Origin: Ophelia neglecta
Taxonomy: Eukaryota
Assembly: GCA_965285935.1 (NCBI GenBank)
Contig: OZ260663.1
Coordinates: 60,574,001-60,638,000 of the forward strand
DNA: 64,000 nt
Direction of reading: 5' to 3'
Translations under genes and position numbers: made by a program
The notes under the pieces: model-generated
Told to the model about the DNA's origin: nothing
Database searches by the model: none
The model's input: only the letters and a program-made list of their open reading frames with translations
Part shown: positions 1,603 to 24,060 of the stretch, in pieces
How the letters are laid out: every line of letters begins with the position of its first letter
How positions within the stretch are numbered: the first letter of the stretch is position 1

Positions 1603-1790
1603 AAGGATAGAGGCAGTTGAGATGACCAGAAGGATGGAAGCAGTTGAGATGACCAGATGGATAGAGGCAGTTGAGATGACCAGAAAGATAGAGGCAGTTG
1701 ATATGACCAGAAGGATGGAGGCAGTTGAGATGACCAGAAGGATAGAGGCAGTTGAGATGACCAGAATGGTAGAGGCAGTTGAGCGGAGCA
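1603..1790. repeat. 27-bp tandem repeat, ~7 copies
   Basis: Unit GAGGCAGTTGAGATGACCAGAAGGATA is repeated head to tail. It explains the spurious periodic ORFs (EAVEMTRRI / VISTASILL). Confidence 0.95.
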
Positions 1791-2291
1791 ACCATTTTCT
1801 GTAATCAATACATTTCTACCAATGAAGACATAAAATTGTACACCGTTGCATCAGGATCAAAAGGTTTCGGTGGATATATGCAAGGACAGTGGTTCGCACA
1901 AGCCTGGCCCGATTCAATTCAGATGCAAGTTACCAGCGACGAAGACCTGTCTATAGCATTTGAGGAACTTTACCCAATAGTAGTGGTGACCATGATATGG
2001 GGGCACAGATGGAGAGGGTTCATGTGCAACAATATGGCCACAGTGGCTATCTTGCATAAAGGAAGTTCTAAAGATTCACATATTGTGCCTCTCATGCGGC
2101 GTTTAACTATGTGTGCTGCGATCAACGAGTATGTTGTTATGTCCCAACATGTTCCAGGCAAGAGGAATCTAATCGCTGACTCCTTATCTCGTTTACAGAT
2201 GGCACAATTCAGGCAGTTAACTCCAGAGGCCAGGCCTATCCTATGCCAAGTACCTCCCCCATCAGCTGTTCTATGGCACTCAAGCCCGTGA
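1790..2291 (+). mobile_element. DIRS/Ngaro-type retrotransposon RNase H remnant
   Basis: Motifs LYT(D>V)ASG..GFGG...GQWF...W, SIAFEELYPIVV...WG, C(D>N)NMATV...KG.SK and HVPGKRNLIADSLSR. Catalytic Asp residues are degraded. Confidence 0.85.
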
Positions 2292-2960
2292 TCCAAGACC
2301 TATGGGAAGCAGCCATCGCACCAAGTACTAGGCAAGCCTATACGACCGGACTCAACATGTTTCTCCAATTCCTGTTGATGACAGCTACAATAGCCAGCGT
2401 CGTATATGCAGACCTTCAGATATCAGAAGATATGTTGATATACTTTGTGGCCCATTGTTATAGCAACAATTTATCTCACGCTACTATCAAACTGTATCTG
2501 TGTGGCGTAAGATTCATGTGTCTAAAAAACAACCTATCACACCCCACCAACTTGCATCAGATGCACACGTTGCTAGGAGGCGACAAACGTGCTCGCGGCA
2601 AGGCTAAGCAGTAATGTTATCCAATCACATTCAGCATCCTCAAGGATGTGTGTGCATATCTAAGCAGAATAAACAATCCTTCGGCAAACTTATGTTGGAA
2701 ACAGCATGTACTGCGGCCTTCTTCGAATTTCTCAGATGTGGCGAATTTACCGTGAATAAACCATTTGACCACTATAACAACCTGTGTGTTAGGGACTTGG
2801 TTATAGCGGACAATTATGTGATGTTAAACCTAAGGAGATCCAAGACCGACCCGTTCAGGGAAGGGGTATCTATCAAACTGTTCCAGACTGACATGTTCAT
2901 ATGCCCTTATGCAACAGGTAGCAAATACATGTCAGAGAGACTGAGGCAGACATCATCTCC
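2288..2960 (+). mobile_element. DIRS/Ngaro-type tyrosine recombinase remnant (frameshifted, truncated)
   Basis: Motifs APSTRQAY, TIKLYLCGVRF, AFFEFLRCGEFT and LRRSKTDPFREG...CP. It lies directly after the RNase H, as in YR retrotransposons. Confidence 0.88.
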
Positions 2961-3058
2961 AGGGGCCGGTTTCTGGAAGAGGTCCTAAGACCAGGATTAG
3001 GATTAAAATGCTTAATCGGTCTTAACTTGCTAGTCCGGGTTTCTGGAAGTGGTCTTAA

Positions 3059-4719
3059 CCCTTCTCCTGCGCGTTGCGTAATATTCTGTGCTAATGACGT
3101 CATGTCTGTTGTCGGGTCCCCGAACATTCTGTGCCGCACGTGCTTGAATGTGCAGCGAGTCACATAATTTTATGCGCGACCATGCTGTACAGATCAAAGG
3201 TGTTGTTGTTGCTCTTATGCTAATGTTCGAAGGTTGGGACAGCCAACCAATCACGGGTGGGTTCATGTCCTTTCACCCAAAAAAGTAGTAGTGTGATTGG
3301 TTCGAATTTCTGTGTTAATGTATGCAAAAATATACGTCAAAACCTGGGGGCGCTCGGTACTACAGACTGCACAGTAATGTACTGGTCCAGTTTATCGCAA
3401 TATACATAAAAATATTCTGCCGACGGCTTTATTCTATACCAAAAACCATGTGATATTACACACAACAGATTTAACTTGTAAAAAAAATATGTTTCTTGAT
3501 CATAAAATGACTTTCAAAAAACCTTCGAATATCCCATCGGTGCCCCCCATCAGCTGTTCAAGCCTGTTGGCGTAAACATCACAGATCGCAAACGAACTTC
3601 ACATTACTTCATTTTTTATCAACACAAACATCGCTTGTAGCACATTCTGTGGTCTAAGTATAATATTAATACTTTATAAATATATACATAAATATCGCGG
3701 AGATTGTCGGTTTTTTTTAAGTATTTTGCAGCGCACCTGTTCATGGCTATGTCATCGCGATGGCAACGACCTTGCCAGTATCCAAAATGGCGGAGTCTGG
3801 TGGTATTTTAGCAAATGTCGCACCGGAAAATCGTGATTTTTTCACCGAGTATTTCCTCGGGCCGGATAGCGACGAAGAGTTTGAAGGCTTTGAGCCTACC
3901 GACAATAATGAAATAGAAGAGATTTCCCGAGTAGCTCCTGAAAACAGAGAATTCTTCAGAGAACATTTCCTCAGTGACAGCGATGAAGAGTTCGACGGGT
4001 TCGAGCCCACAGATCTCCCTGCAACTTCGGACTGGAGAGATGGCAACAATTTTTCTCCCACGATGCACACATTTACCGGCGAGCCGGGACTTAAAGCAGC
4101 AATCCCAGAGTTACCACGGCAACCATACTGGACCTAAACATATATTACTTTCATCACTTTATTCCCACGGTCATATCCCTACATATGCATATATGGATCA
4201 ATGGTGTACGGAGCCTGTATAACAAAAAAAAAAAATGGTTTAATTTACTTCGTTATTACATAACAAACCTCCCTTGATGGTTGCATGTGACACTCCTAAT
4301 CAAACTTCTGTTTGCTTATGTTACCATGGCAACACCATATGTAGACACCAGAAAAATATTTTATTATATGGTGGTAAATTTTATTACTCCCTTTTTAACA
4401 TAAATATGCTAAAACAGCCAATTGGTCTGTAAAAAATGCCTTTTTATCAATATTTTACATATTTGCCTGGTTACCATGGCAACCATGCTGGAGCTACAGG
4501 TATATTACTTGCATCAATATGTTCCCATGGTCATATTGCATAATCTGCATATAGGGTCTAAAGGTGTATGGAGCTTTTAACTACCATAAACTGAGTGATA
4601 ATTACAGGTGTGCTATTTCAGACTTTTTTTGCAAAACAATTCAGCACAGCAGGTATACTAGGCTAAAACAATGCAGTGGTACAGTGTGTTAATGTGTAAA
4701 CAAAGCAGCAGGAGAAGGG
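3059..4719 (+). mobile_element. Internally deleted piggyBac element
   Basis: TTAA TSDs at 3055-3058 and 4720-4723, with 12-bp TIRs CCCTTCTCCTGC/GCAGGAGAAGGG. Internal ORF 3760-4137 resembles the acidic N-terminus of piggyBac transposases (W...F.GEPG) and carries a duplicated ~30-aa segment. Confidence 0.85.
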
Positions 4720-5058
4720 TTAAGACCAAATTTGTCCACGAGGACAAGGTATGTTGACTTATTGCAATGTGTTAAGTACACGTCTGCATTGATTTTGCGT
4801 GAAACGGCGTAGAAATACATACATGACTTTTTAAAGCAACTTGTTTGTGTGTCCTAACCAATCATAATGGCTTCCCACGTGTATATTTGCATATTGTTAC
4901 TATGACATCAAAATTAGCCTACCAATGTCAACACAGTAGTAATTTATGCCGTTGACTTAAATTTTGCCGATAGTACACAACACAGCTGAATGCCTTATAA
5001 TTCTCAATACTTCAAATAGTTTACGTACTTTATTGACTATGTTTTTATCTTATTGCAG

Positions 5059-5880
5059 ATTGTTGAGTTTCACCGGTTTGTAATTAAACTACGGGAGAAG
5101 CACCAGTACCCCTTGTCCCATATCTATAATATGGACGAAACTCCCATGAGGTTTGACAGCCCCCACGCCCGTACGCTGGATACAGTTGGTACTAAGACTG
5201 TCCCCATTCGTACCAACGGGGAAGAGAAGAAGGGGTTCACCGTCGTCCTCGCCATGGCAGCAGACGGCAGCAAGGTCAGTCCCCGAGTGATTTTCAAGGG
5301 GAAGCGTGCCCTCGGCGACTCCTGCAGGCAGCCGGGTGCCACAGCCACTGTCCAGGCCAAGGGGTGGATGGACGAGCCCGGCTGTCTGGAGTGGATACGG
5401 GTCACTTTCCCCCTCGGAGCCCCTCGCAAGCTGCTAATGTGGGACTCTTTCGCCGCACATCTCACGGACGCTGTGAAGGCGGAGCTACGACACAGGAACG
5501 TTGACACTGCCGTCATCCCCGGTGGTCTCACCTCCCTCCTGCAGCTCTTGGATGTTTCCGTGAACAAGCCGTTCAAGGATCAGATAAGGGCTGCATGGTC
5601 GGAGTGGATGATAACCAGGGAGCACACCACAACAGCCGGAGGGCGTCAACGCTGCCCAGAGAAGGATGTAGCCATTCGCTGGGTGAGGGAGGCCTGGGCC
5701 GCTATTCCACCAGCCATGGTAAGCAATGCCTTCCTAAAGACAGGCATTGCCAATGCTTTGGATGGCACACAAGACGACGCCATCTACGATGACGAGTGGG
5801 ACATATCCGATGTAGAGGATTTTGATGTAGAGGCCATGTTTGGTAGCGACAGTGAGGAGGAGGACTTTTGGGGTTTTTAG
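5059..5880 (+). mobile_element. pogo-family (DDE_1) transposase terminal exon
   Basis: Motifs NMDETP, KGWMD, LLMWDSFAAH, IPGGLTSLLQ.LDVSVNKPFK and an acidic tail. It is preceded by a pyrimidine-rich acceptor (ttattgcag). The HTH exons are absent. Confidence 0.92.
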
Positions 5881-6989
5881 TAAACTTGTGTTAGGCCAAG
5901 AATCAAACATGGTTGAGATAGAGACTCCCTTCCCCGAACCCCCTTCCCCTGTGTAGTGATACGGTCACAGTATAGCTTATTGACTGGTTTTGAGCCTGCT
6001 GGATTGATGTAAATATTTGTAAATATGTTTTAAGTTGTTTGGTTTAGATTTTAGTAGATTCGTATTTTGTTCGATTGATGTTAATATTTGTAAATATGTT
6101 TAAGTTGTTTGGTTTAGTAGATTCGTATTTTGTTTTTGTTTTTGGGTTGATTTGTAATAAAACTTGAACTTGGTATCCGTGTCTAGTCTTCCTTATCAGT
6201 ACTAGTAGTATAAATAGAATGAGTTCTGCTCAGTGTTAACTTGCCTTTCATATAGATGGCATCACCAGATAGTGCTGAAAAATACTAGTACTTCCTGTTG
6301 TGTTTAAAGCCATGCAAACGAAGTAATGATTATGCTAGTGAATATATTTGTTCGTTTAAAAGGAATTGCCATTCAAAAACCAAATACTGGTAAATATGTT
6401 ATCTCACAATTAACCTGTCATTTATTAGAAATCAGATTATATCGACAATCATCATATTTGGTTAAACGCCTATTTTCGCCCATTGAAGTTCTGCATGAAT
6501 TCTGCCCACCCATCGAGTTTTCGTGAAGTAGTACTACTACCACTATAAGCCAAGGCTAGTCTGCTCAGACAAGAGTAGATGTTGAATTAATTTGTTCAAT
6601 TAAAACCTGGCCTATATAAATAAGCATCAATATATTAATAAAAAGTGTGCCTATTCATTTCCAGTGTGTATTGAAGCCTCACTGTCAGGGAAAGTGACAC
6701 CTCCTTCATGCAAAACGAGGTTCATCGAAGGCTGCACCTCCTACAGACTATCAATCGAGTACACTAGGGCTCTGAATATCACAAGAGAACAATCAAATGG
6801 CATGCTGCTCAGTCATCCCGGGGCGAAACTGAAGCTGAGAAAACTTTGTTTTCTCTAAAGAGAGACATTTACGACAAAATTGAAATTTTGACAAATTTCA
6901 CTTGGTGTGAATAATAGACACGTCATTCTCACAGGGCAAGTGACTTCCTACGACCAATCAGCGTACCTTCTCCCACTGCCTAGCTTAAA

Positions 6990-8606
6990 CCCAATAAACA
7001 ATGATAAACTGGGCCAATACTGGGATAATCCCGTACCACTGGCCCAATACAACGATAAGTGGCCCGGTACTGGCCCGTTTCTTGTATTCTGTACACTACG
7101 TGAGCCTACTTTCTGTGCGACCAGGTACTAAATGTCACTATCTGGCCAGTACTGGCCCATTTCGTGCATCCTTTATCCATCGCATGTACATATGTCGGGA
7201 ATATGTCAACTGGGCCAGTATCGGCCCTTTACATCTGCCAAAAATCGAAAGGTGGTACAATTTTTATTATAGGAAATTGATTTGAGTATATCCCAAAAAA
7301 ACGCCTCCATTTTAAACAAATTGTTTTTGACAGTAATCATTTCGTTTGGTTGATATCTCGCAAATGATAGCTGACGTACAGTCAGTGCGGAGCTGCTTTT
7401 CTGCGAGATTGCCCTAGCCTCGTGAAAGTTACGGAAATTTGCTCATCGCTGTCTCATCAAAGCAAATCTAGTCAGGTAGAAATGTAAGTTCGGCCCAGTT
7501 TCGGCCAAATGCATGTAAGAACAGTGAAATCTTAAGTTATTTCTGCCTTGACGTAGTGTGTTTTCAATGTATATGTGTTGACAAAACCGGTGATTTTACC
7601 AAATTGTTGTGCCATTGAGCGATAATAGGGGCATAGGCAGTGTGGCGGGAATTGTGTTTTTGGCGGGCTAGAAAGCAGCAATAACTGCAAGGATGCCACA
7701 GAGACCGACATTCACAAAGCAATAATGATCTGGCTGAGGAATGCAGCAGACCGCCATAGTGGCCGGAAGAACAGGGAGGCACGGCAGGCCCGTAGAGAAG
7801 ATAGAGATACTGATGTGCCAGCCGCATCCCCATGATGCCCTGATATATCTCAGTTTTGTTAATTTATAATATCTTCATGTACTTTTAACATTTGGACATC
7901 ATATGGACAAGAGAACTGTGATGTGTGTGGATAGGCAGCTGTGGGGGACACAAACAAAGTGGATAGTTATAAACTGAGTAGACTATAGTCTATAATTATG
8001 TGATATATCCTTGACAGTTCTGTGGACAATGTTTCCAGGTATTATATATGTGTAAGGTCATGTAACTTGGACAAGACCTGTTGTTAGCCCAGAGCAGGCC
8101 CAGCATGTCAATTTTCTTTTATTAAGAAGTTAATTTTCTCCATCCATTTTAGCTGAATTGATGGATTAGAAATCACTGAGGGCAATAGGACCCGTACAGG
8201 AGATGTTTCGCCATTTTTCGTTATGTGGTTTTTTAATAAATTATTTTCGCATGTACAGATTGTTTTCCATTTATTTTAAAGGTCATATATACACTAAAGT
8301 ATAGGGCCATAAACATTAAAGGAACTGGCCCTGAATGGGGCCGATACAGTTAAATAACAATGGCTCAAAATTGGTTCAGTATTGGACCAATACTGGGCCA
8401 GTTTCTCAACTTATTGTTAAATAGCAATGGCTCAAAATCGGTTCAGTACTGGACCAATACTGGGCCAGTTTCTCAACTTGGTACTGGGCCAGTTGTATAC
8501 TGCTGTGCAAGAATTGAATGGGCCAATACTGGCTGTCGGTATTGGGCCAGTAAAGCATGCTTTATTGGGTCCAATACTGGGCCAGTACCTCCATGTAAAT
8601 AGCGGG
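6990..8606 (+). mobile_element. Non-autonomous EnSpm/CACTA-like element with subterminal ACTGGCCCAGT repeats and DUF4806-like remnant
   Basis: CCC...GGG-type ends and many inverted (T)ACTGG(G)CCC/CCAGTA motifs clustered at 7000-7230 and 8320-8590. The + frame near 7680-7780 reads DATETDIHKAIMIWLRNAADRHSGRK, like the C-terminus of DUF4806/BEN-type accessory proteins. No clean TSD. Confidence 0.55.
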
Positions 8607-8768
8607 CGACACGGTTAAGCTTACGTCATGGCCGACAGATGGCGTCACCGGCCAACTGTCGTTCATGTTTACAAATTGTGGGACCAAAGTGGGATCAGCT
8701 GATTGTGATACACACGTGTCAAAAGGCAGCGGGCATCATGGCGGAAAATACGGCGACAGATAGAGAAA

Positions 8769-10090
8769 ATGAAAGTGCCACAGCTCAAAACATATCTGAA
8801 GAACCGAAATATACCATCTTCCGGATTAGCGAAGAAAGATTTGAAAAATCTAGCCGAAAATGTACATGTACTAAACCTGCCGCAACTAGAGGAAGATGAC
8901 ATCCATCAACAAGCTATCGACTTCCGCACGGCAGAAGATGGCCGTAAGCTACCAAACCCCAGTCTGGTTAAAACATCCAGCAATCTTGCCAATCTGCCTA
9001 TGGTGGAACAGGCCGATGTTTTTTCTTATCTTTTGGCATATTGTGGATGGGATGCCAACAGGCTGAAAGCATTCCGATGTGATGGTGGGTACCAGCTCTT
9101 CCGCGAAAGTCATGTGGATGGAGTGTCAATGGGTGTCATACACGAGGATGAGCATGGGGCTGTCCTAGAAGCGCCAGTGTCGGTTTTGAAAGCTGCATGT
9201 ATGCCTGAGACAAGCCAAAAAAGTGCCCCGTATAATGTCACCATATTACTGGACAACAAAGGACCCGTTATCAAGGCTAGATGCACCTGCCCAGTGTGAG
9301 TATCACTTTTCAAGTTGTAAAAATATCCCATATTATCATAAATTACACTAAAACATTTATTTAAAACATGCCTGAGAATATCTGCCTACATGTAAACATA
9401 TAGTGTAAAAATCTAGATACCCCACTGATTTTCTACTATTCAGGGTTTGGGCGAGTAAAGGACTCATGTGCTCGAGTACGAGTAATGGCTAATCACACGA
9501 GTACTAGTACAAGAAATCCTGGATGTACGTTACATATTAATCAGGGGGGGGGGGGGGGGGCTGCAGAGGTGATGTGGAAGGTATATTTAGAAAACCCAGT
9601 TTAAATGACTATTGTGGAATATATTATACTAAACTGTAGCATTAAAAATATATTTAAGCTTAAGTACCAATTGAGTGCAAATACATGTACTCACCCCAAC
9701 CCTGCTACTATTTTATAAAAAGGGATATTTGAACATGTCTAATATGATTTCTATTTGAGTTGAGGAAATGTGTTGATCTTTAGCCCTTCCAGGCTGGCTG
9801 TCTTATAATGTATTTCATTTTGTTCCAGTGGTAATGGTACCTGTAAACATGTCATTGCTACTCTGTTTTCTGTGGTGGAATTCAACAGCCGCCGCAAAGA
9901 TGATAGCACCATTGCTCCAACTGATGTGCCATGTGTGTGGAACAAACCGAGGAAGGAGTCCATCCCGAAGAGAGCACGACAGATCGATTTTCGCCGTAAA
10001 GATGCCAAAAGCTGTAGATTAGATCCTGATAGGCCAGACTTCACTCAATGTACCTCTGGTGGGGTCAATCTGGCCAAAGAATGGGTTGAA
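8769..10090 (+). mobile_element. SAP + SWIM zinc-finger ORF of an ISL2EU/Harbinger-like (YqaJ-encoding) transposon, intron-containing
   Basis: SAP-like start MKVPQLKTYLKNRNI..SG..KKDL. Exon 1 ends ARCTCP|gtgagt and resumes at ~9828 with GNGTCKHVIATLF...PTDVPCVWNKPR (CxC...CKH SWIM motif). Confidence 0.75.
9441..9704. mobile_element. hAT-type MITE in the intron of the SWIM ORF
   Basis: TIRs CAGGGTTTGGGCGAGTA / TACTCACCCCAACCCTG with a perfect 8-bp TSD CTACTATT (9433-9440, 9705-9712). Confidence 0.85.
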
Positions 10091-10356
10091 CTGAGGTCAG
10101 GCAGGGGTAGCCTCCTTTTACTCCTTGTTCGCTGAACCAGCAAGACACGTTTTCTATCGCTCTGTTTACCCGACTTGCTAACGTTAGAGAGGATATTACG
10201 GGTCAGCGAACACGGTGACTGCTACAGTGAGTTAAGTTCCATTCTTTACATTGTTGGTAATCAGTCAGCCTTTAGCCCTGCCAGTTCACTCAATCCCGAC
10301 TAATTTCACCGCCCGTTGAACTTTGGCCTATTGACCACTGTCCTGTTTGGTACACA

Positions 10357-11480
10357 ATGGCCGCCGCCTCGACCAGCGGCAAGCCCCACATGGTTTTGCT
10401 CGGGCATAGTTTTGTGCATCGCCTGCATACATACCTGTCTCAACATGGTATGGAGGACCTGGGTCTGCTAAACATCTGCAACATGCATTACTTTGGTTTC
10501 AGAGGTGTTCACATCCCTGCCTTCTCGTACAAAATGAGTCTGGTTTTGCGTATGGCAAGTCCAGCCCTCGTGCTGTTGGATATATTATAATTATGTGTTA
10601 AGTTTTGTTACCTCTGAGACGGTGTTTGCTCCTCTGATCTGACACCTGTAATCTATTGTTAGATAGACTCCATGTCTGGGTTAAGTGTGGTTATCTCAGA
10701 GACATTGATTGCACCTCACAGCCTCCAAGATGGACAATAACAATTGACACCTGGTGGATATACATTTGGCATGCCAGAGGTTGTACTGACACCTGTAAAT
10801 CTATAGTGTAGCTAGACTTCATGTCTGGGGGGTGTTATCTGCCAATTGCACTCTCGGCTCGGCCTAGGGCTTATAAGCCAGGACAGTTCTGGGCCTGGTA
10901 GTCACTGCTCTCACAGTAATAGTACTGTGACCATGTTACCCAAATCCCTCCCCTCCCCTATCTAGCGGCATATGTATTACTTATCATCAATATATATTCC
11001 TTTCTTTTAGTTATTGTAATTTTTATGCATTGTTATTGTATAATTGTGACATTTAGTTACTCGGTATCTACTGGGCCATGAGTATATCTCATCTCCAACT
11101 TGCAAAAATAAAGGTAGTCTAGTTTTTGCCACCTCCCGTTTCATCAAGTCTTTTAGAGATAACGGCACGAACGATTTGTCCCTACCGCGCTTGCTTTGAT
11201 TCGTATTAACGGTGTACAAGCTGTTATATTGTTTATGATCATGCCCCGGTCACCTATTTGCATTTATCCAACTAGGCCAGACTTTAACGAACAAGCGGCC
11301 AAGTACAACCGGGAATTGGAAAGGCTTGTTGGAAATTGTAGCGCCCACGTAGGCTTCCATAAACACAAAGGCATGCTACTGGACTGGCAGTCATGCTTGG
11401 ACGCCGACAGCGTGCATTTAAGCAGGGATGCGCCCGATAGTGAGTCCAAATCGGGCAGGGAAAAGTACTTTTTTAGTGTC
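10357..11480 (+). mobile_element. SGNH-hydrolase ORF of a DIRS/Ngaro-like retroelement, split by an insertion
   Basis: LLGHSFVHRL (GDS-like block I) before the insertion, then LLEI.GTNDL (block III) and D.VHL (block V) after it. Confidence 0.75.
10574..11146 (+). mobile_element. Probable solo LTR inserted in the SGNH ORF
   Basis: TG...CA ends (TGTTG...CATCA), TTATAA at ~10871 and AATAAA at ~11107. It interrupts the hydrolase frame between PALV and LLEI.GTNDL. No clear TSD. Confidence 0.55.
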
Positions 11481-11481
11481 C

Positions 11482-11880
11482 AAACTGGTGTAGTTCCCTT
11501 GGTACAATTGGTACCTAAACTATCGGGATGTCGTTGTGTGGCCCCCCGGGGAAACTGTTGTGTAGTTCCCTTGGTACCGTTGGTACCTAAACCATCGGGA
11601 TGTCGTTGTGTGGCTCCCCAGGGAAACTGTTGTGTAGTTCCCTTGGTACCGTTGGTACCTAAACTATCGGGATGTCGTTGTGTGGCTCCCCAGGGAAACT
11701 GTTGTGTAGTTCCCTTGGTACCGTTGGTACCTAAACTATCGGGATGTCGTTGTGTGGCTCCCCAGGGAAACTGTTGTGTAGTTCCCTTGGTACCGTTGGT
11801 ACCTAAACTATCGGGATGTCGTTGTGTGGCTCCCCAGGGAAACTGTTGTGTAGTTCCCTTGGTACCGTTGGTACCTAAAC
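11482..11880. repeat. 72-bp tandem repeat, ~5.5 copies
   Basis: Unit AACTGTTGTGTAGTTCCCTTGGTACCGTTGGTACCTAAACTATCGGGATGTCGTTGTGTGGCTCCCCAGGGA, with near-identical copies. Confidence 0.97.
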
Positions 11881-11897
11881 ATTTATTTTAATTTCAG

Positions 11898-12670: not shown

Positions 12671-12812
12671 ATAGAAAAGTTCGGGTTGCTAGAATCTGGA
12701 TTAAAAAATCGGATTAAATCTCTGAATTAAGTATAAGTTAATCTTGTGGATTAAGTGGGTTGCTGGAAAGGTAGGATCTGGGTAAGGAGCCGGAGGCATT
12801 TGATTAAACCAG

Positions 12813-13400: not shown

Positions 13401-13423
13401 ATGTGTTACGTATTATTTCCTAG

Positions 13424-13625
13424 GCCAAATGTTCTGCACTAATGGCAGCAGGTGTGATCTGGTGGTGTACACTTTGAATGACATGAAAATCATTCCAGTC
13501 CTAAGAGATGATGACTTTATTGCCGTTACGGTATCTCAGCTCGAGGAGTTCTTTAAAGAATATTTTCCTGGTGCTTTGCTGTCTGCCAAGTTTTACAAAA
13601 AATATGTCCTAACCTTTGATAAGCT
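13424..13625 (+). mobile_element. YqaJ/lambda-exonuclease C-terminal exon (likely the same element as the SWIM ORF at 8769)
   Basis: Acceptor tttcctag, then GQMFCTNGSRCDLVVYT...V.RDDDFI...L..FF, the typical C-terminus of transposon YqaJ domains. Confidence 0.7.
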
Positions 13626-14029
13626 TGGGTTTTTTTCATTGATTGCCAACAATTTCCATTTAATAAATGTGCATCTGTTGTGCATGAAGATTACAGTATT
13701 AACAGGTTGAATTGAAAGTGCAGGGCACTTGATTTATATTGCTGCAATACCTTGTTACCCTTTGCACCCACCAGAATTACCAACAGTTAAGATGGTGACA
13801 CACTGAACAAAAAAACATATACCTTTTTTAATCAGAATATTAGTTGGTTATTGATAAACATAATTTCATAAACACCAACTTGATTCCCCACATGTATATT
13901 GTCTCTCATTCAATGAGGAGGGCAATTGTAGAAGATAGGGATATCAATCTAACTTCCTTGCTGTGACCTGGGTATGAATTTGATACAGACAAGACAGATT
14001 ATCATGTTAAAGTACATTCACCATCAAAT

Positions 14030-14330
14030 AAGTCAGATGATACAAGGCTCTATGACAAAATTGACATTATCTGAATTTTTGCCTGCCTTTACTAAATATA
14101 AAAGAATAATGTGTGAAGCCTATCCACAAAGGCAAAAGGAGCTAGACATGTACGAAGGAATTGTAATAAACATTTACAATAGCCACGGTATGATGGACGC
14201 GTATGAATGTGCTAAATGTACAGAAGTACTACATCAAAAAAATGTCAAGGTGGATTGGTCTGTGATGGACACAAGACTTTATGGCCTAGTCACAAGGCAA
14301 AACCTGTTCAAAAAGAATGTCAGAATGCAT
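14030..14330 (+). mobile_element. DIRS-type gag-like ORF remnant C
   Basis: Motifs LTLSEFLPAFTKYKRIMCEAYPQRQKELDMYE and KVDWSVMDTRLY. Confidence 0.7.
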
Positions 14331-14369
14331 TTTTGATAAAAACTAAGTTAACATACACCCAAAGATGCT

Positions 14370-15010
14370 TTATTTCAAGAAAAAATGATATTCTTGTGAA
14401 GCATTCAGTAATTGGAATAACTGATGATAATGCAAGGGATGCTGCAGGGGTAAAAGCATTTGAGGATGAAGCTATTAATATACTAGCCAAGTCCAGAGAG
14501 CATGTGACCACAATCAGTAAGTGGACGGATGGATGCACTTAGATTATCAAGAGAAGTATGCATTCTTAGATATCAATTTAAGAATAATGAAATTACAAGA
14601 AACTATCTTGAAACATCCCATGGTTAATCTGTCTGCGATGGACTGGGATGAGTAGTTAAAAATTGTGAAGTAAAAAAGAAGTAATTGGGAACACCACAAA
14701 GATTTGTTTGACCTCTGTGAGAGATAAATGAGCCATGGGGATAAAGTAACATATACAGATGGACATACAACACATATATCCCGGCGAGGCTTTGTGTTTG
14801 TTAACAAATGTGATGTCAATCATACTCCCAGAAAAGTGAAGGACATTGTCTGGAACAAGGAAATTGCAATGTGTAAGGAGCACTGTTCAGAAAATGAGAC
14901 TCAAAGTAAGAAAACCATCCTGCTACTGTGATAACTGTACTTGAACTGGAAATTGTCGTAACAGCGAGTATGTTTCTCCAATGAGGTTTGTCAGTTTAGA
15001 GGCACTAAAA
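14370..15010 (+). mobile_element. Degenerate DDD transposase, Sola2-like
   Basis: Reading across stops and frameshifts gives ITDD..RDAAGV..F, WTDGC, RNYLETSHG*SVCDGLG*VVK and a C-terminal CYCDNC. Assignment to Sola2 is from memory of the SHGK.CDG motif. Confidence 0.6.
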
Positions 15011-15847
15011 CACAATGTATCATTTTATTTCAATGTTGTCCCTTACCTTATGATATATCTACTCAATCAACAAGAATCAATTTATCAAGTGTTCACATCA
15101 CTGGTGTCATTTATATCATTAGCTTTAACACAGCTTTACCAAAAAAAACTTAATATTCTCTGTAAGTGTGCGGAGAACAAGAACTGTACAATATACTTAC
15201 TCTTAATCTACTTGAACAACGATAAAACGGGAAATCATTGGGATAAGGAATTTTCAGTTCGCTCGAAGATAATCGTGTGGATTTGGCTATGTCTTCTACG
15301 TTAGACGAGATATTTGTGTAGGCATCCCCTTCATTTCAGGGAGATGACTTTGCGTGGAATATGCAAATTGCATAAATCTGTCTCGATGACCCCCTATGAT
15401 ATGGACAATCCCTCAAACTGAACAGTGGCTCAATGACAAGAAGAACTAGCAAATGTAAGCATTACAGGTTCAGCCACACTTCCCAAAGCCATTTTAAAAC
15501 AACTATTCTTGGATAACGTGGGTGTCGCTTAAAGTTGAACCACTAGTAAAACCTGCAGTGCTACAGTCACCGCTGTTTCTAACGCAGAGTCGGACTTAAA
15601 GCCCAGAGATGTTCAAAATGCACCAAGCGGTTCAAATAATTCTGTGGGAGGCCTTATAGCGGATTCAGCAACTAATTTAAGCAGAGAAGGGACCAGACTA
15701 TTTTTTGAGAGTCATCCATGAATGAAAGCTTATGCAAATAAGTTTACTAAAGCTACTGCATGTACCATCAGGCCAATATCATCATACTGGTATGCCCCAT
15801 ACAGCAGTTTGAACAATTCTTAACTGTTTTTTTCTTTTTTCTTTAGC

Positions 15848-16080
15848 CTGCGCTGCCGATGGGAGCATAGCGACCCCTTATGTCAATTTCAAGGGAAAGA
15901 GGAAGCTAGGGGAAACCTGCCCATTCAAGGAGTCACCGCCAAAGTTCAGCCAAAGGGATGGATGGACGAATCTGGCTGCCTTGAGTGGGTAAGAAGCACC
16001 TGTCCTCGTGACACAGCCCATGCAAGCTTCTCGTCTGGGACTCGTTTTCTGCCCATGTCACCAGCGCAGTGAAGTCAGAG
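15848..16080 (+). mobile_element. pogo DDE_1 transposase fragment (copy 1, empty LINE site)
   Basis: Acceptor tctttag, then CAADGS..PYVNFKGKR...QPKGWMDESGCLEW..KLLVWDSFSAH. Confidence 0.85.
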
Positions 16081-16881
16081 TGAGAGATAAATGAGCCATG
16101 TGGATAAAGTAACATATACAGATGGACATACAACACATATATCCCGGCGAGACTTCGGGTTTGTTAACAAATGTGATGTCAATCATACTCCCAGAAAAGT
16201 GAAGGGCTTTGTCTGGAACAAGAAAATTGCAATGTGTAAGGAGCACTGTTCAGAAATGAGACTCAAAGTAAGAAAACCATCCTGCTACTGTGATAACTGT
16301 ACTTGAACTGGAAATTGTCGTAACAGTGAGTGTGTTTCTCCAATGAGGTTTGTCAGTTTAGAGGCACTAAAACACAATGTATCATTTTATTTCAATGTTG
16401 TCCCTTATGATATATCTACTAAATCAACAAGATTCAATTTATCAAGTGTTCACATCACTTGTGTCATTTATATCATTAGCTTTAACACAGCTTTACCAAA
16501 AAAAACCTTAATATTCTCTGTAAGTGTGCAGAGAACAAGTACTGTACAATATACTCACTCTTATTCTACTTGAACAACGACAAAACGGGAAATCATTGGG
16601 ATAAGGAATTTTAAGTGCGCTCGAAGATAATCGTGTGGGTTTGGCTTTGTCTTCTACGTTAGATGAGATATTTGTGTAGGCATTACCTTTATTTCAGGGA
16701 GATGGCTTTGCGTGGAATATGCAAATCGCATAAATCTGTCTCGAGGACCACCTATGATATGGACAATCCCTCAAACTGAACAGTGGCTCAATGACAAGAA
16801 GAAGTAGCAAATGTAGGCATTACGGTTTCAGCCACACTTCCCAAAGCCATTTTAAAACAACGATTTTTTCGATATCGTGGG

Positions 16882-17958
16882 TGTAACGTACCTCCTATTT
16901 TTTTTTTTTTTATAGTAGATTAGGCATTAGGCAATAGATTGTAGGACTAGCCTTTTTGTATAGGAACATTGCCCAACTATGACCCCTTAGGAACCCTAAT
17001 ACCGCCAAAGATGTAAGTAGAAGTTACAAGTTATATATGTGTCAAGATGTAGGGTTTGTGCTCAAGGTCAACTTTCATATCACTCTATTATATTTTATGT
17101 CAAATTTCTTGTATTTAAATCCATGTTGTAGAAGGCCACTGTAATACACTGGTCATAGCAAGAGGTCATGTATGCATGTAGCAGCCCACTTCAATGTACA
17201 TGCATTCGCTCAGTTGAGCTATGTTTAGAGTAGCCACTGGCCTCCCTGAACCTTATGCAGAGTGAGATGCGGGTCAGAAGGTCATAAAGTTTGTCGTGGG
17301 TGGTAGACGGCACACCAGTGGGGACAATTCTTAGCTTAATCTAATGTAGAACCAAGCATAGGCCTATACGTTCTGTCAGTAAAGTTTATAAAGTACCATG
17401 TAAATGGATAAAGTTTATGTATATGTATATGTATTCTATAGCTAAACTTTTAACATGCCAGACAGGCTTAATTTATTTGTATTGCTTGGTCTGTATATCT
17501 GTGCAGTATGTAAGCACGTATATTATCTAGCTGTCACTCAATATCTTCTGTGTTAAGGCCATTTTATCTCTCACTACAAACATACGTCTCTGGATATTTC
17601 ATAACCCTTCTGTTTGTGCCTATATGGTTTATTATTATGTGTTATTCTAGCTTTTTCACTATTATAAGGAGTGCCTGTTTTTGCTAGTGCCTATGGAAAT
17701 GTATAGTATGGGTTTTTCGCTCTTTGCAGTTGTAACCGTCAAGCGTCAAGCCTATATCCCACCATTTTCAATTACAAAAATTTATAACATTTACCATTCA
17801 AATAACACACCATTCAATTGCATCCACATTCCATAATGTCTATATCATAATAAATTTTTACAAAAGTAAGACGCGTATACATTCTTTGGCAAGTTTAACC
17901 TCTTTTTGTATCACACCTAAAAATACTCCTCTAACGACAGCACGGGCTGTGCGTTATA
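16882..17958 (+). mobile_element. Probable solo LTR (Gypsy-like termini)
   Basis: Starts TGTAACGTAC and ends GTGCGTTATA (8/10 inverted match), with AATAAA near the 3' end. Absent from the paralogous copy 1. TSD imperfect. Confidence 0.6.
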
Positions 17959-18576
17959 TGGACAGTGGATCAATTACGAGAAGAACTAGCAAATGTAGGA
18001 ATTACGGTTTCAGCCACCCTAAGCCATTTTAAAACAACTCATTGCTCAATGACAAGAAGAACTAGCAAATGTAAGCATTACAGGTTCAGCCACACTTCCC
18101 AAAGCCATTTTAAAACAACTATTCTTGGATAACGTGGGTGTTGCTAAAAGTCGAACCACACGTAAAACCCCCAGTGCTACAATCACTGCTGTTTCCAAGG
18201 CAGAGTCAGACCTAACAGCCAGAGATGTTCAAAATGCACCAAGCTTTCAAATAATTCTGTGGGAGGCCTTATAGCTGATTCAGCAACTAATTTAAGCAGA
18301 GAAGGGACCAGACTACTGAGAGTCATCCATAAATGAAAGCATAAATGCAAATAAGATACTAAAGCTACTGCATGTACCATCAGGCCAATATCAACATACT
18401 GGTATGCCCCATACAGCAGTTTGAACAATTCTTAACTGTTTTTTTTTCTTTTTCTTTAGCCTGCGCTGCCGATGGGAGCATAGCGACCCCTTATGTCAAT
18501 TTCAAGAGAAAGAGGAAGCTAGGGGAAACCTGCCGCATTCAAGGAGTCATCGCCAAAGTTCAGCCAAAGGGATGGA

Positions 18577-21372
18577 TTTTTTTTTTTTTTTTTTTTTTTT
18601 TTACATTCATTAAGCATATATACAAGTATGACGATTTCAATCAACTTCACTGTCTATTTGAAACATTTGTTCCAAATTGGTAAAATGTCTTTAAATTAGC
18701 AAGTTTTGAAAGTAACATATTCCAATACCTTAGTTTGCACATTGTTTCATCAAGGCTAAATGATTTTGTCTGCATGGGACTATCATTATTTTTACACCAG
18801 TTTACATAGATACTATACAAAATTATGCTTATTAGTACATTCCTAAATTTAGAATGGATGTTTTTACATGTGAATCCTAATACAAGATGTTTCCATTGTA
18901 TGTTACAATTAATGCGTTCACCTATAAACTGCCAAATGCTTTGCACAAATTTACAAGAGTAATATATGTGCATTACATCTTCCATCTCACCACATATCAA
19001 GCATGTATCATTTTCTATAATTTTCCACTTTTTCAGCACACTTCTGCTGATTAATAATTTATGAATTAGTTTGTAATTAAGTTCAGATAATTTTGCATCA
19101 GGCATAGAATGGACTTTCCACATATAGATTTCACCCCATTCTTTACATTCAATTTTAATCTGAAATACTTTCTCCCAATACTTTTCAACATAGGACCTTT
19201 CGAAGTGTTTACTTTTAAGAACCTGGTAGTACATACGTGACTTAATGACACTTATACTGTTCAAATCTGTATATAATTTATCAATATAAATATAACATTT
19301 TGGAATGCAATTTCTCATGTACCTACATTTGTAAAGGTGGATACCATGATACTTCACAATGTTTTTAGTAACTTTCCTAATCTGTATGTATTCGCTTAGC
19401 CAGTTTACTTTACTCTGTAATATATTGAAACAATGATTTTCTTGCAAAAGAGTTCCATCGTTATTAAACAAATCCTTGACATACAAAATTCCAGACTTTA
19501 TCCAATTTTTAAATAGTAGGCATTTTCCATTTATATTGAGCAATGAGTTACACCACAGTGGTTGGTTAAGAACATCATACGTATTCATGTTTTGCAAATC
19601 ATTACGAACATGCTTACATTGAAAAAAAGAGCACATAGCTTGTATATAAAAAGTTGGCAGGCATAGAATAGTATCTACTTCTTTTCTGTCAGTAAAGTAG
19701 CATTTTAATAAGTATTCAAAATTTAAACCATGTTTATGTAAACAGTGGTTAACAATGTTAAGTAATGACGAGTTTTTCAGTATATGACCAACCCATACAG
19801 CCTGCTGTGCTTTAATTTTACTAAACAGATCAACCATATTGAGGCCTCCATCTTTATAGTCACCTATCATGGTGTTTCGCTTAATACGGTCTTTTTTGTT
19901 CCAAATATAATTATATATAACTCTTTGTACTTTTACAATGTATTCAGTAGGCATCTCAAGAATGCTGCTGACATATACAATTTGAGAAATTGCAAAAGTT
20001 TTTACAATGTAGATTTTGCCTCTCAGTGATAATTTTCTGGATTTCCAGACATTGAGAGACATTTCTAATTTCTTAATTTTGTTCATCCAGTTCATAGCAT
20101 TGCATTCTATCCGGTCATGACCAATATAGATACCCAAACATCTTATTGCACCATTTGTAAACTTAATACCATTAAATACATTGGGAAAATCTCTATATTT
20201 GCCAAGCCATATACCTTCACACTTTTCCAGGTTCAATTTTAAGCCAGAAACTGAACAGAAAGATTCAATAACATTAAAAGCATTTACAATTGAGTCCAAA
20301 TCTAGCAAAGCTAGGGTAGAGTCATCTGCATACATGGACACTTTAATCTCTTCATTGCAGAATTTAAAACCACAAATGTTAGAATTATTTCGTATATTAA
20401 TTGCCATAATTTCAAGTGATATTATGAATAACAGAGCTGAGATTGGACATCCCTGTCTTATACCTCGCGAAGTTTCAAAGGAGCATGACAACCACCCATT
20501 ATTCTTTATCAGCATTGTCGGACTATTATATAATATTTTCATCCAGGTAATGAAATATTCACCAAAACCAAATTTATGCAATACCCTAAACATAAAATTC
20601 CAATGTAATCTGTCAAAGGCCTTTTCAAAGTCAAGACATACCAGAGCTCCCTGCCCGTCTGTATTATTACAGTAATCAAATATATCTTGAATTATTCTTG
20701 CATTAATTCCAATGTATCTCCCTTTAATGTACCCACTCTGATTATTATGTATTATGTTGTAAATAACCTTTTGCAATCTTCTAGAAAGAACAAAAGCAAT
20801 AATTTTATAGTCATAATTAGTCAATGATATTGGCCGGTAGTTTTTCAATAAATCCCTTGGTCCTTTCTTATGAAGTAATGCCAATACTGCATGTCTCATA
20901 GATGGAGACATGATACCCGCTTCAAAAGTTTCTGCTACCATGTCAAAAAAAGAATTCTTCAATACATGCCAGAAGGCCTTGTAAAATTCTGGTGTGAGGC
21001 CATCAAGCCCTGGTGATTTACCGTCTTTCATACTTATAACAGCTTGATACAATTCATCTCCAGTTATTACACCTTCGATCATACTCATGTCATTGGCACT
21101 CAATTTTGGAGTTGGTACATTTTGCAAATAATTATCAATGTCATCAGTAGATATAGTTTCACTCTCGTACAAATTTCTATAAAATGTGACACATTCTTTA
21201 AGAATACTACTATTATCTTCGGCTGAATAATTTTCATATGTTATTTTACGAATCACATTGTTTGTTTGTCTGGACTTCTCTAAACCACAAAAATATTTGG
21301 TGGACTTTTCTCCTTTTTCACTCCAATTTACTTTCGATCGAATTATAGTACCACTTGTTACTTCATCTTCTT
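18577..21372 (-). mobile_element. 5'-truncated L1/Tx1-clade LINE with intact RT-zf ORF2 portion
   Basis: Motifs GEKSTKYF, KSPGLDGL, NYRPISL, DFEKAFDR, GIRQGCPIS, YADD and C-terminal CxxC..H...C. Stop at 18647, poly(A) = T run 18577-18602, 12-bp TSD CAAAGGGATGGA (18565-18576, 21373-21384). No endonuclease domain. Confidence 0.96.
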
Positions 21373-21920
21373 CAAAGGGATGGATGGACGAATCTGAGTG
21401 GGTAAGAAGCATCTGTCCCCATGACAGCCCATGCAAGCTTCTCGTCTGGGACTCGTTTTCAGCCCATGTCACCAGCGCAGCGAAGTCAGAGTTAGCCAGA
21501 CGCAACGTTGATGTGGCCATCATCGCAGGCGGACCAACCTCCCTTCTACAGCCCCTCGACGTAGCTTTTAACAAGCCGGTCAAGGACAGCGAGCGTGGTG
21601 CCTGGAACCAGTGGACTAGTGAGGGCGAGCATACCTTCACCCCGGCTGGCCACCAGCGTGCCCCCTCCAAGGAGATGGTCCTTCGCTGGCTGAAGGATGC
21701 ATGGACCACCCTGCCCTCTAGCACCATCTAGAAGGCATTCCGGAAAACCGGGATATCCAACGCCTTGGACGGCACCCAGGATGACTCACTCTGGGAAGAG
21801 TCAGACCACGAGTCAGACAACGAGTCAGATACAGAACTTGACATCTCAGATACGTCAAATTTCTATGTAGAGGCTATGTTCGGTGCTTCTGACCCTGAAG
21901 ATGAGGATCCGAGTCCTGAG
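21373..21920 (+). mobile_element. pogo DDE_1 transposase remnant (copy 2, downstream of the LINE; upstream part 18460-18576)
   Basis: Motifs KGWMD, LLVWDSFSAH, TSLLQPLDVAFNKP, FRKTGI.NALDGTQDD and an acidic tail, with a stop at ~21729. Confidence 0.9.
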
Positions 21921-22149
21921 TTTAGACTTTGCAGCCATGAACTCTCATGCTATATGCATTGGTAGACGTAGAACTTTTGTGTTCTGTATAGATAGTAAGC
22001 ATGTAAATATGCGTGTAAATATGTTGTACTTTAAAAAATGAAATGTCATTGGGATTTTAGTTTTTGGTTTCTCTAAGTCTAAAAATGCGTGACCGTGGTG
22101 GTGGGTTTTATATGGAAAGAGAGAACTAAGAGAAATATCAATGACAGCG

Positions 22150-23003
22150 CCTTACGAAGTGGACTAGCAACAACAAAGCTTGGATGACAAGTGAAGTATT
22201 CAGAGACTGGTTAAAGGCTTTTAACACCAAAATGAGAGCCCAGAACAGGCATGCCTTGATGATGCTGGAAACGCCCCTTCCCACCCACAAGATGTCAAGC
22301 TCATCAATGTGAAGATAGCCTTCTTTCCTGCCAACACTACCTCCATACTACAACCTTTGGATCAGGGAGTGATCCATACCTTTAGGGCTATCTACAGAAA
22401 GAATCTCCTGCAGCATGTACTAACTCTGCTGGACTCCCAAGATGCCCCATGCCCTATCTCAGATCCATCTCACTGCTGGATGCCTGCTATTGGACCCATT
22501 GTGCCATCAGGTAAATTCAACCAGAGACAGTTATGAAGTGTTTCGCCCTCTGTGGGTTCATTACAGATCTCGAGGAAGTCACTGACCACAACCCTTGCCC
22601 TCAGGACGCCCTGCTGGACCTAAACACTGTAGCCTATACCCCAAGCAACTTCTATATCAAAGACTACATGGCCATAGACGAATACGCCCCAGCAAACGAG
22701 GAGCTGGCAACAGGACGGGGTGAGCAGCTTGTAACGGACCTAATCACAGAGCGGCAGGAAGTGGAGGCTACCCATAAAGAGGAGGGTGAAGAAGACGATG
22801 AGCCATTCATTACCTGTGTCATCACCTCAGTGGGTCAGGTTCTGTATCTAGCAAAAGAGCTGCAGTTGTTTGCTACAATGCAGGCTGACACCAATCTGGC
22901 AGATTGCATGTCAGAGTCAATTGAACTTCTGACTTAGATGTACATCCCTGGCAAGATATCAACAAAGCAGCCCACTATCCATTCCTTTTTCGCCAAGAAA
23001 TGA
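22150..23003 (+). mobile_element. Tigger-type DDE_1 transposase remnant
   Basis: Motifs NNKAWMTSEVFRDWL, FFPANTTSILQPLDQGVI and terminal KQPTIHSFF, with frameshifts. Confidence 0.85.
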
Positions 23004-23384
23004 TATGATAAAACTACTTTGTGTGACAAAAAGTTATAGAACATTGTGCTACATCATTTGAGCAAGCAAATGACAGGACACTTTGTGTGGCATAATGTGG
23101 TAAATGGTTAATGTATGTGATAGGACACTCGTTCTGTGTGATGTGAGTTTTTATTACTTATATTTATTTATTGCAAGTAAATATTTGTATCTATTCATTT
23201 TTATGTAAGAATAAAACATTAAATTTAAGTATGGTCATTGGTGTCTCAATCACATAATAATCATGCTAAAAGCCAGAGTCAGAGAACTCACAGATCATGA
23301 AACTTTGAATAGTGTGGAAACATGGCAACGAAATCTTATTTTTGCGCCTTCCTTGCATAAACCTTTTTTCAGGCTTGCAATTGA

Positions 23385-24060
23385 TATGGGTAATCCATGT
23401 AACCCCAACAAGAACCCAATGGCAGAAAGAGCCATTCAGGAGCTTTATTCTGAACTCTCAAAAATGGACCCCATGTGTGGCCCAGTCACTTCTGCCCAGC
23501 TGGCCATTGCAACTTGCAGCCAAAAGATCCGGGGCAGAGGCCTGTCCGCAAGAGAAATATACAGACCCAGCGAGACCAATTTACCACAGAACAATTGCCA
23601 GTCCAGTATCAGTCACTCATTAAGAAACAGCATGAAACTCGCCTGGATAATCACAGTGCCAAGGCCCAAGCCAAGGGTTCTGGGCCAAGGGTACTGGGCC
23701 AAGGGCCCCACCCATTCTCCATGTTGGAGATATTGTCTACCCCTGGAACGACCGAAACAAAATCAATGGCCACGACCGATACCTTGTCACTGATGTCACA
23801 GATGGTTGGTGTCACATTCAGAAATTCATGGGTTCACAGCTCTGAGCCCAATCATACAAGGTCCTACTGAGCGAGTACTTCAAAGTATATGTTTAAACCA
23901 AAGTATTCTCATATGAAGATATGCCACACACTCCGATCTTCCCTCCGACTGAGGAAGATAATGACGACGACAAGTCCAGAGACTCAGAGGATCCTGGTCC
24001 AAGACGCTAATGACGTTCCCGTCATACGCCAAGACACGTCAATGACTATGAACGATTTTA
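23385..24060 (+). mobile_element. Gypsy-like LTR retrotransposon integrase/C-terminal remnant
   Basis: Motifs NPNKNPMAERAIQEL, IRGRGLSARE, QRDQFT.EQLP, VGDIVY and RKFMGSQL, spread over shifted frames. Confidence 0.65.

What the first reader, a model, noticed from the sequence alone, without database searches (positions are those of the whole stretch)
1790..24060. Strand-biased transposon graveyard: candidate uni-strand (flamenco-like) piRNA cluster
Seen: about 12 independent coding remnants from unrelated superfamilies all read on the + strand. They are DIRS RH/YR, piggyBac, pogo x2, DUF4806-like, SWIM/YqaJ, SGNH+gag A, gag B, gag C, Sola2-like, Tigger and Gypsy integrase. Both putative solo LTRs also appear + oriented. 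Only the youngest insertion, the LINE, is on the - strand. For 12 of 13 independent fragments the two-sided binomial P is about 0.003. Most pieces are short, abutting and lack their own termini. Established: uni-strand piRNA clusters accumulate TE fragments antisense to the precursor. Inference: a minus-strand precursor crosses this field, entering from the TCEANC2 side, and makes antisense piRNAs.
Basis: partly seen in the sequence, partly recalled or inferred. Interest (0 to 1): 0.8.

Follow-up and report, generated by a model that had tools for sequence, protein, structure and literature searches.

The report
Same-strand transposon pile-up beside TCEANC2
A 22-kb gap between two convergent genes is packed with broken transposons from many families, and 14 of the 15 that can be oriented point the same way; this is the layout of a one-strand piRNA source locus, but no RNA data could be reached, so chance remains at least as likely.

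Summary
Window 1790-24060 is a nearly gap-free mosaic of at least 20 repeat pieces. Of the 15 that can be oriented, 14 read on + and only a very young LINE reads on - (two-sided binomial about 0.001). Minus-strand ORFs gave no family hits apart from the LINE, and a minus-frame control found no diverged homologues.

Most superfamily names were confirmed or supported. 'DUF4806-like' was not found. 'Sola2' and 'Gypsy' are unverified as names, but both pieces are real coding remnants.

The field is intergenic. It lies between a KY-like gene (+, ending about 4.6 kb left of the window) and a complete TCEANC2-like gene (-, coding part ends at 24801). No whole composite copy turned up elsewhere, and the pieces differ widely in age (71-100% identity to their nearest copies).

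The layout fits a read-through uni-strand cluster, with the transposons antisense to TCEANC2 and starting under 1 kb past its stop codon. Against that, poly(A) hexamers are not depleted on the minus strand. My odds are about 0.45 for neutral pile-up with chance co-orientation, about 0.33 for a piRNA cluster, and the rest for other causes.

Nothing similar was noted elsewhere in this genome by the scan.

The parts
106..870 (.). High-copy MITE-like repeat (90-97% identical copies, internal inverted segments). It lies left of the field and cannot be oriented.
1594..1783 (.). 27-bp minisatellite, 7 copies
1800..2962 (+). DIRS-like retroelement fragment: an RNase-H-like ORF followed by the N-terminal SAM-like domain of a tyrosine recombinase. 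About 91% identical to at least 5 copies.
   Evidence: Pfam Phage_int_SAM_1 E=4.7e-5; copies
2955..3058 (.). About 100-bp high-copy repeat (96-100% identical copies), split by the piggyBac insertion
3055..4725 (+). Complete 1.67-kb non-autonomous piggyBac with TTAA duplication and inverted ends; 4 other copies in the genome (DNA identity 97-99%). Its + direction rests only on a 138-aa N-terminal-like ORF.
   Evidence: no outside homologue
4736..6047 (+). pogo-type transposase fragment no. 1 (DDE_1). 97% identical to one copy that shares the junction with the next repeat, and 77% to the rest of the family.
   Evidence: Pfam DDE_1 E=1e-23
6073..6527 (.). High-copy short repeat (97-99% identical copies), not oriented
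6989..8600 (.). 1.4-kb non-coding repeat unit with fixed ends in all copies. In this copy it carries a 207-bp insert at 7686-7892. Not oriented.
8598..10104 (+). SAP-SWIM part of a SAP-SWIM-YqaJ element (96-99% identical copies). It is cut about 455 bp short of the shared unit, which in other copies runs on into a Viral_alk_exo/YqaJ domain.
   Evidence: Pfam SAP; L020 SAP then YqaJ
10108..12682 (+). It contains a 72-bp in-frame minisatellite at 11488-11880. A paralogue lies at C2:27975219-27977717.
   Evidence: no Pfam or outside homologue
10579..11164 (+). Solo terminal repeat of a tyrosine-recombinase retroelement, nested in the unit above
   Evidence: paired same-sense repeats 2.7-4.5 kb apart at three loci; Phage_int_SAM_1 and Phage_integrase ORFs just upstream on the same strand in L024
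12764..13405 (+). 'gag B': fragment of a multi-copy transposon ORF
   Evidence: over 50 diverged homologues in frames of 236-1041 aa; minus-frame control negative
13422..13813 (+). C-terminal tail of a second, diverged YqaJ-type element
   Evidence: 11 homologues in frames up to 517 aa; not the same insertion as 8598-10104
13868..14293 (+). 'gag C': fragment of the first ORF of a retroelement (87% DNA identity to at least 6 copies)
   Evidence: in L035 a 493-aa open frame holding this domain is followed by an RVT_1 ORF
14300..14540 (+).
   Evidence: homologues at 36-40% identity inside 760-1076-aa frames
14717..18650 (+). 5' region of another retroelement family joined to a truncated pogo no. 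2. The whole is locally duplicated in tandem (units at 14717-16084, 16080-16868 and 18044-18650). It carries an unoriented 1.05-kb repeat at 16911-17958.
18650..21374 (-). Very young LINE inserted into pogo no. 2, with an open 1026-aa ORF and a poly(A) tail at its low-coordinate end. It is 99-100% identical to many copies.
   Evidence: Pfam RVT_1 and zf-RVT
21375..22078 (+). pogo no. 2, 3' part (DDE_1), 85-89% identical to copies
22134..23189 (+). Old Tigger-type fragment (74-80% identical to copies)
   Evidence: Pfam DDE_1; an intact copy in L029 has CENP-B_N, HTH_Tnp_Tc5 and DDE_1 on the same strand
23215..23836 (+). Old Pol / integrase-region remnant of an LTR-type retroelement (superfamily not verified)
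   Evidence: 129 homologues in frames up to 1696 aa; Atlas lead to rve-type clusters
24801..27957 (-). TCEANC2-like gene with its complete coding part in four exons (about 27957-27856, 26078-25929, 25384-25193 and 25019-24801, then a stop). Its 3' end faces the field.

Best explanation
Shown: this is an intergenic transposon accumulation zone, 22 kb long, almost entirely made of transposon sequence. It was built over a long time by at least 15 separate insertions, with nesting, truncation and one local tandem duplication. It lies between the 3' ends of two convergent host genes.

Inferred: the cause of the co-orientation. The co-orientation itself (14:1) is real. I judge it slightly more likely to be an unselected coincidence, picked out because a reader was looking for patterns, than the mark of a function. 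On this reading the locus does nothing beyond tolerating insertions.
For: - The pieces are independent. Each has its own set of genomic copies, its own end points, and its own identity level, from 71% to 100%.
- Nesting is visible: piggyBac inside a small repeat, the LINE inside pogo no. 2, and a solo terminal repeat inside the 10108-12682 unit.
- The field is bounded. The intergenic DNA to its left is mostly unique, and to its right lies the TCEANC2 3' end.
- A 14/15 split has P about 0.001. This scan has read 154 windows of this genome. With roughly one or two transposon-dense fields per window (my estimate), a few tenths of a chance case are expected in what was read, and a few in the whole 762-Mb genome.
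- Even flamenco is only 79% antisense in D. melanogaster and 50% in D. simulans (PMC10495008). Strongly oriented clusters are therefore themselves rare.
- Minus-strand AATAAA is not depleted, at 23 against 12 on the plus strand. This does not suggest selection for a long minus-strand transcript.
Against: - P about 0.001 is small.
- The bias holds across unrelated classes with different integration chemistries: tyrosine-recombinase and LTR-type retroelements, piggyBac, pogo/Tigger and SWIM-YqaJ elements.
- It holds across a wide range of ages.
- A piece oriented only afterwards from other copies, the solo terminal repeat, also came out +.
- The single exception is the youngest insertion, which selection has had the least time to act on.
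Confidence: 0.45

Rival explanations
1. Read-through uni-strand piRNA cluster. Transcription of TCEANC2 on the minus strand fails to stop, runs leftward through the field, and yields a precursor that is antisense to nearly every transposon piece. PIWI-pathway processing then makes antisense piRNAs. Insertions in the useful orientation are kept, as in the trap model.
For: - 14 of 15 orientable pieces are antisense to the TCEANC2 direction.
- At least 14 different families are present, almost none twice, truncated and abutting.
- The field starts 965 bp after the TCEANC2 stop, with no canonical poly(A) hexamer for 1352 nt.
- It is intergenic, as most mosquito core clusters are. Those are uni-strand and fed by read-through from the upstream gene (bioRxiv 10.1101/2022.08.22.504762).
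- Several pieces are 87-99% identical to copies with long open frames, so antisense small RNAs from them could find targets.
Against: - There is no RNA evidence of any kind.
- Because the flanking genes are convergent, either orientation would have supplied an upstream-gene story.
- The minus strand carries 23 AATAAA in 22 kb, more than the plus strand.
- At 22 kb the field is at the small end for such clusters.
- The oldest pieces (71-80% identical to copies) would give poor guides.
- The youngest insertion is in the 'wrong' sense.
Confidence: 0.33
2. The field lies in some other minus-strand transcription unit, such as a long 3'UTR isoform, a downstream-of-gene transcript or an unannotated non-coding RNA. 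Sense-oriented insertions bring poly(A) or splice signals and are purged, as in ordinary introns, with no piRNA role.
For: The positional facts are the same as for the piRNA reading. Antisense bias of transposons inside transcription units is established knowledge.
Against: - The coding part of TCEANC2 ends before the field.
- From my own knowledge, intronic bias is modest, and weakest for DNA transposons, which make up several of the co-oriented pieces.
- Minus-strand AATAAA is not depleted.
Confidence: 0.1
3. One large composite element, or a single capture event (Helitron-like or template-switch patchwork), brought the pieces in together, so their orientation is one event rather than fifteen.
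For: The pieces abut with gaps of 0-50 bp, and many lack their own ends.
Against: - Only two local junctions recur elsewhere, at C9:33100673 and C2:27975219. The other pieces match different loci with their own ends.
- Identity to the nearest copies ranges from 71% to 100%.
- piggyBac has its own TTAA duplication.
- The LINE and the solo terminal repeat are plainly nested later.
Confidence: 0.04
4. Ascertainment artefact: a reader of the + strand simply saw + ORFs more easily.
Against: Tests applied to both strands keep the bias.
Confidence: 0.03

Closest known systems
flamenco-type uni-strand piRNA clusters of Drosophila
   Same: A dense, diverse set of truncated and nested transposon pieces with a strong common orientation. 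The bias here (93%) is at least as strong as in D. melanogaster flamenco (79% antisense, PMC10495008).
   Different: - flamenco is hundreds of kb, has its own promoter, and is dominated by Ty3/mdg4 LTR elements.
- This field is 22 kb, has no identified promoter, and is about half DNA transposons.
- No small RNAs or transcript have been shown here.
Read-through core piRNA clusters of mosquitoes (bioRxiv 10.1101/2022.08.22.504762)
   Same: It is intergenic, it starts directly downstream of a conventional gene on the same strand, it would be uni-strand, and its size is in the kb to tens-of-kb range.
   Different: - Those clusters were defined by small RNAs, chromatin marks and knock-down of the upstream gene. 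None of that is available here.
- Their oriented cargo is mainly endogenous viral elements.
Ordinary transposon-rich intergenic 'graveyards' and nested-insertion zones
   Same: Nested insertions, truncations, a local tandem duplication, mixed ages, and no host coding sequence.
   Different: Such zones normally show mixed orientation. Here 14 of 15 pieces agree.
Antisense transposon bias inside introns
   Same: Transposons are antisense to a neighbouring minus-strand gene.
   Different: The field lies outside the coding part of that gene, and the bias is far stronger than the usual intronic bias.

Membership tests
Uni-strand (flamenco-type) piRNA cluster | Abundant 24-32-nt, 1U-biased small RNAs mapping to one strand only | not testable with these tools
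Uni-strand (flamenco-type) piRNA cluster | A long single-stranded Pol II precursor crossing the locus | not testable with these tools
   No RNA data. Minus-strand AATAAA is not depleted, at 23 against 12 on the plus strand.
Uni-strand (flamenco-type) piRNA cluster | Transposon fragments predominantly in one orientation, antisense to the precursor | tested here: met
   14 (+) to 1 (-), P about 0.001. The direction of transcription itself is unknown.
Uni-strand (flamenco-type) piRNA cluster | Many different families present as truncated or nested pieces | tested here: met
   At least 14 families in 22 kb, with nesting and truncation.
Read-through piRNA cluster (mosquito type) | The cluster begins within a few kb downstream of an expressed gene on the same strand | tested here: inconclusive
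   The position is met: the field edge at 23836 is 965 bp past the TCEANC2 stop, with no canonical hexamer for 1352 nt. Expression and read-through are untested, and the convergent gene layout would fit either orientation.
Intronic antisense-biased transposon field | The field lies inside an intron of a minus-strand gene | tested here: not met
   The four TCEANC2 coding exons and the stop codon all lie at 24801-27957. The left neighbour is a + strand KY-like gene.
Single composite mobile element | The same junctions recur in other genomic copies | tested here: not met
   Only two local junctions recur. All other pieces have separate copy sets.

The most novel reading that the evidence does not exclude
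A flamenco-like, read-through-fed uni-strand piRNA trap sits directly downstream of TCEANC2 in a non-model, probably invertebrate animal. It would hold antisense pieces of DNA transposons as well as retroelements. That would show that orientation-selected piRNA traps are not a peculiarity of flies and mosquitoes.
Probability: 0.33. Interest if true: 0.55.

Novelty: new member of a known kind. Interest (0 to 1): 0.35.

Why it matters
If small RNAs confirm it, this would be a compact and fully sequenced uni-strand piRNA trap outside the insect models. Its upstream driver gene would be known, and its insertions could be dated over a long period. That makes it useful for testing how orientation selection acts on DNA transposons as well as retroelements.

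If small RNAs do not confirm it, the locus is a calibration case. A 14:1 orientation run can arise without function, so orientation alone should not be used to call piRNA clusters from sequence.

Tried and rejected
This left one lead unfollowed: C1:20.69-20.90 Mb holds same-sense copies of three of the families found here.
- The look-up of encoding contigs found no record for the 240-aa exonuclease ORF. I did not pursue the species identity further.
- The search for homologous proteins found nothing for 'gag A' or for the piggyBac N-terminal ORF.
- Pfam gave nothing for several + ORFs and no DUF4806 hit.
- Rfam gave no hit in the window.
- I tried to orient the 16911-17958 repeat from RT ORFs next to one copy, then dropped it, because a second copy does not share those ORFs.
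- The 6989-8600 unit has no ORF in any copy.
- CpG observed/expected tracks insertion age only.
- Rejected readings: the intron-of-TCEANC2 reading, the single composite element, and the plus-strand reading artefact.
Full report
**Where the window lies.** The window is G000:C5:60574001-60638000, in a 762-Mb assembly. Notes from other windows of this genome describe it as an invertebrate. I did not establish the species.

**Check of the observation.**
- Stop-to-stop ORFs of at least 100 aa in 1790-24060 number 23 on + and 8 on -. The rest of the window shows 4 against 13.
- The minus-strand ORFs are the LINE, two ORFs made by tandem repeats, and frames antisense to plus-strand coding pieces.
- Pfam on 20 minus-strand ORFs gave only the LINE, with RVT_1 and zf-RVT.
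- Pfam on plus-strand ORFs gave a tyrosine-recombinase SAM-like domain at 2180-2611, DDE_1 at 5020-5877, 21231-21728 and 22225-22533, and SAP at 8709-9296.

**Pieces without Pfam hits.** I searched the six-frame translation of the animal's own genome for these.
- The plus frames of 'gag B', the YqaJ tail, 'gag C', the 'Sola2-like' piece and the integrase-like piece each find many diverged homologues. Those homologues sit inside long open frames, up to 1041, 517, 575, 1076 and 1696 aa.
- A minus-frame ORF of similar length (12892-13209) finds only its one near-identical paralogous locus. The method therefore separates coding from non-coding frames.
- Better-preserved copies confirmed directions:
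  - In L020 the SAP ORF is followed on the same strand by a Viral_alk_exo/YqaJ domain.
  - L029 carries an intact Tigger-type transposase with CENP-B_N, HTH_Tnp_Tc5 and DDE_1.
  - In L035 the 'gag C' ORF is followed by an RT ORF.

**Map of the field.** Searches of the same genome with the field's DNA in pieces of 1.6-3.2 kb gave the piece boundaries, copy numbers and identities. Local BLAST and junction reading refined them. The field is a nearly gap-free mosaic; the 'parts' list gives all coordinates. Points worth noting:
- 3055-4725 is a complete non-autonomous piggyBac with TTAA on both sides and matching inverted ends. It is inserted into a small high-copy repeat.
- 10579-11164 is a solo terminal repeat of a tyrosine-recombinase retroelement. 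Paired same-sense repeats flank an internal part at three other loci, and the recombinase ORFs in L024 lie upstream on the same strand. It is nested in the low-copy unit 10108-12682.
- 14717-18650 contains a local tandem duplication, so the pogo piece at about 15.8 kb duplicates pogo no. 2 and does not count separately.
- The LINE at 18650-21374 is inserted into pogo no. 2 and is 99-100% identical to many copies.
- Identities to nearest copies run from 71% (integrase-like piece) and 74-80% (Tigger), through 85-92%, to 96-99% (piggyBac, SAP-SWIM). The field therefore grew over a long period.

**Tally.** Fourteen independent orientable pieces lie on + and one on -, which gives a two-sided binomial P of about 0.001. 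Without the piggyBac, whose direction rests on one 138-aa ORF with no outside homologue, the count is 13 to 1 and P is about 0.002. About 15.2 kb of the field is plus-oriented, 2.7 kb is minus-oriented, and 4.4 kb is unoriented.
- 'DUF4806-like' was not found.
- 'gag A' is supported only by ORF length and two or three copies.
- The labels 'Sola2' and 'Gypsy' are unverified.

**Context.**
- To the right lies a complete TCEANC2-like gene on the minus strand. Med26 is split over two exons, TFIIS_M is in the last exon, and the stop codon lies just below 24801.
- To the left I fetched 80 kb. A KY-like gene on the plus strand, with three Ig-like_KY hits, has exons from about -12850 to -4650.
- The intergenic DNA from -4600 to 0 is mostly unique, apart from one old repeat.
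- The field is thus a discrete block in the 29-kb gap between two convergent genes, abutting the TCEANC2 3' end. It is not an intron of TCEANC2.
- The field as a whole was not found repeated elsewhere. Only two local junctions recur.

Indirect points in favour:
- The strength of the bias and its spread across transposon classes and ages.
- The diversity of families in the field.
- The start of the field 965 bp after the TCEANC2 stop, with no AATAAA or ATTAAA on the minus strand for 1352 nt.
- A published precedent of intergenic uni-strand clusters fed by read-through from an upstream gene in four mosquito species (bioRxiv 10.1101/2022.08.22.504762).

Indirect points against or neutral:
- With convergent neighbours, either orientation would have offered an upstream gene.
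- The minus strand of the field carries 23 AATAAA against 12 on the plus strand.
- The field is small for such a cluster.
- The oldest pieces are too diverged to guide well.

**Weighing.**
- flamenco is 79% antisense in D. melanogaster, and less in D. simulans (PMC10495008). At 79%, the chance of seeing at least 14 of 15 in one sense is about 0.15, against 0.001 under a fair coin. That is a likelihood ratio of about 150.
- The prior is the fraction of transposon-dense fields that lie in strongly oriented uni-strand clusters. It is unknown for this animal. I take 0.1-0.5%, which gives roughly 13-40% for the piRNA reading.
- I settle on about 0.33 for the piRNA cluster, about 0.45 for chance in a neutral accumulation zone, about 0.10 for another minus-strand transcription unit, and small shares for a composite element or a residual annotation artefact.

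**Novelty and interest.** If real, this is a new member of a known kind: uni-strand, read-through-type piRNA clusters. A specialist would not be surprised, but would find a compact, datable example with many DNA transposons useful. Without RNA evidence it remains a well-documented candidate.

Noticed in passing
window 18650-21374: A LINE family that looks currently active. This copy has an open 1026-aa ORF (RVT_1 plus zf-RVT). More than 20 genomic copies are 98-100% identical, share the 3' end, and have staggered 5' truncations.
   Followed up: partly
window 3055-4725: A textbook non-autonomous piggyBac with TTAA duplication and matching inverted ends. Only 5 copies were found in the genome, and no autonomous partner was detectable with its N-terminal ORF.
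   Followed up: partly
window 11488-11880 and C2:27976537-27977717 (L023): A 72-bp (24-codon) in-frame minisatellite, 5.5 copies at 98% identity, inside the long ORF of a low-copy element. It is also present in the paralogous copy.
   Followed up: no
window 14717-18650: A local tandem duplication with a unit of about 1.36 kb. It copies the junction between a retroelement 5' region and a truncated pogo, so the duplication is younger than that junction and older than the LINE insertion.
   Followed up: partly
G000:C1:20.69-20.90 Mb (L029 and hits): Copies of three families from this field occur there, all in the same relative sense: Tigger-type, SAP-SWIM-YqaJ and the 1.05-kb repeat. This may be another co-oriented transposon region.
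   Followed up: no
window 23449-24801, minus strand: There is no AATAAA or ATTAAA for 1352 nt after the TCEANC2-like stop codon. Only variant hexamers such as AATAAG occur.
   Followed up: partly
L010/L011, window coordinates -12850 to -4650: A KY (kyphoscoliosis-peptidase)-like gene on the + strand with three Ig-like_KY hits. It is followed by four related exon-sized ORFs that carry one repeated module.
   Followed up: partly
window 30148-31167 (+): A 340-aa exon encoding WD40 repeats plus a SOCS box (WSB-like gene). It lies on the strand opposite to TCEANC2, and its upstream exons were not mapped.
   Followed up: no
window 50794-52674 (-): An open 627-aa frame with no Pfam family at E<=0.01.
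   Followed up: no
window and 80 kb to its left: CpG observed/expected is very low overall (median 0.31, host genes 0.14-0.3). It is 0.45-0.8 in the younger transposon pieces, so it tracks insertion age. This points to heavy germline methylation of this genome.
   Followed up: no
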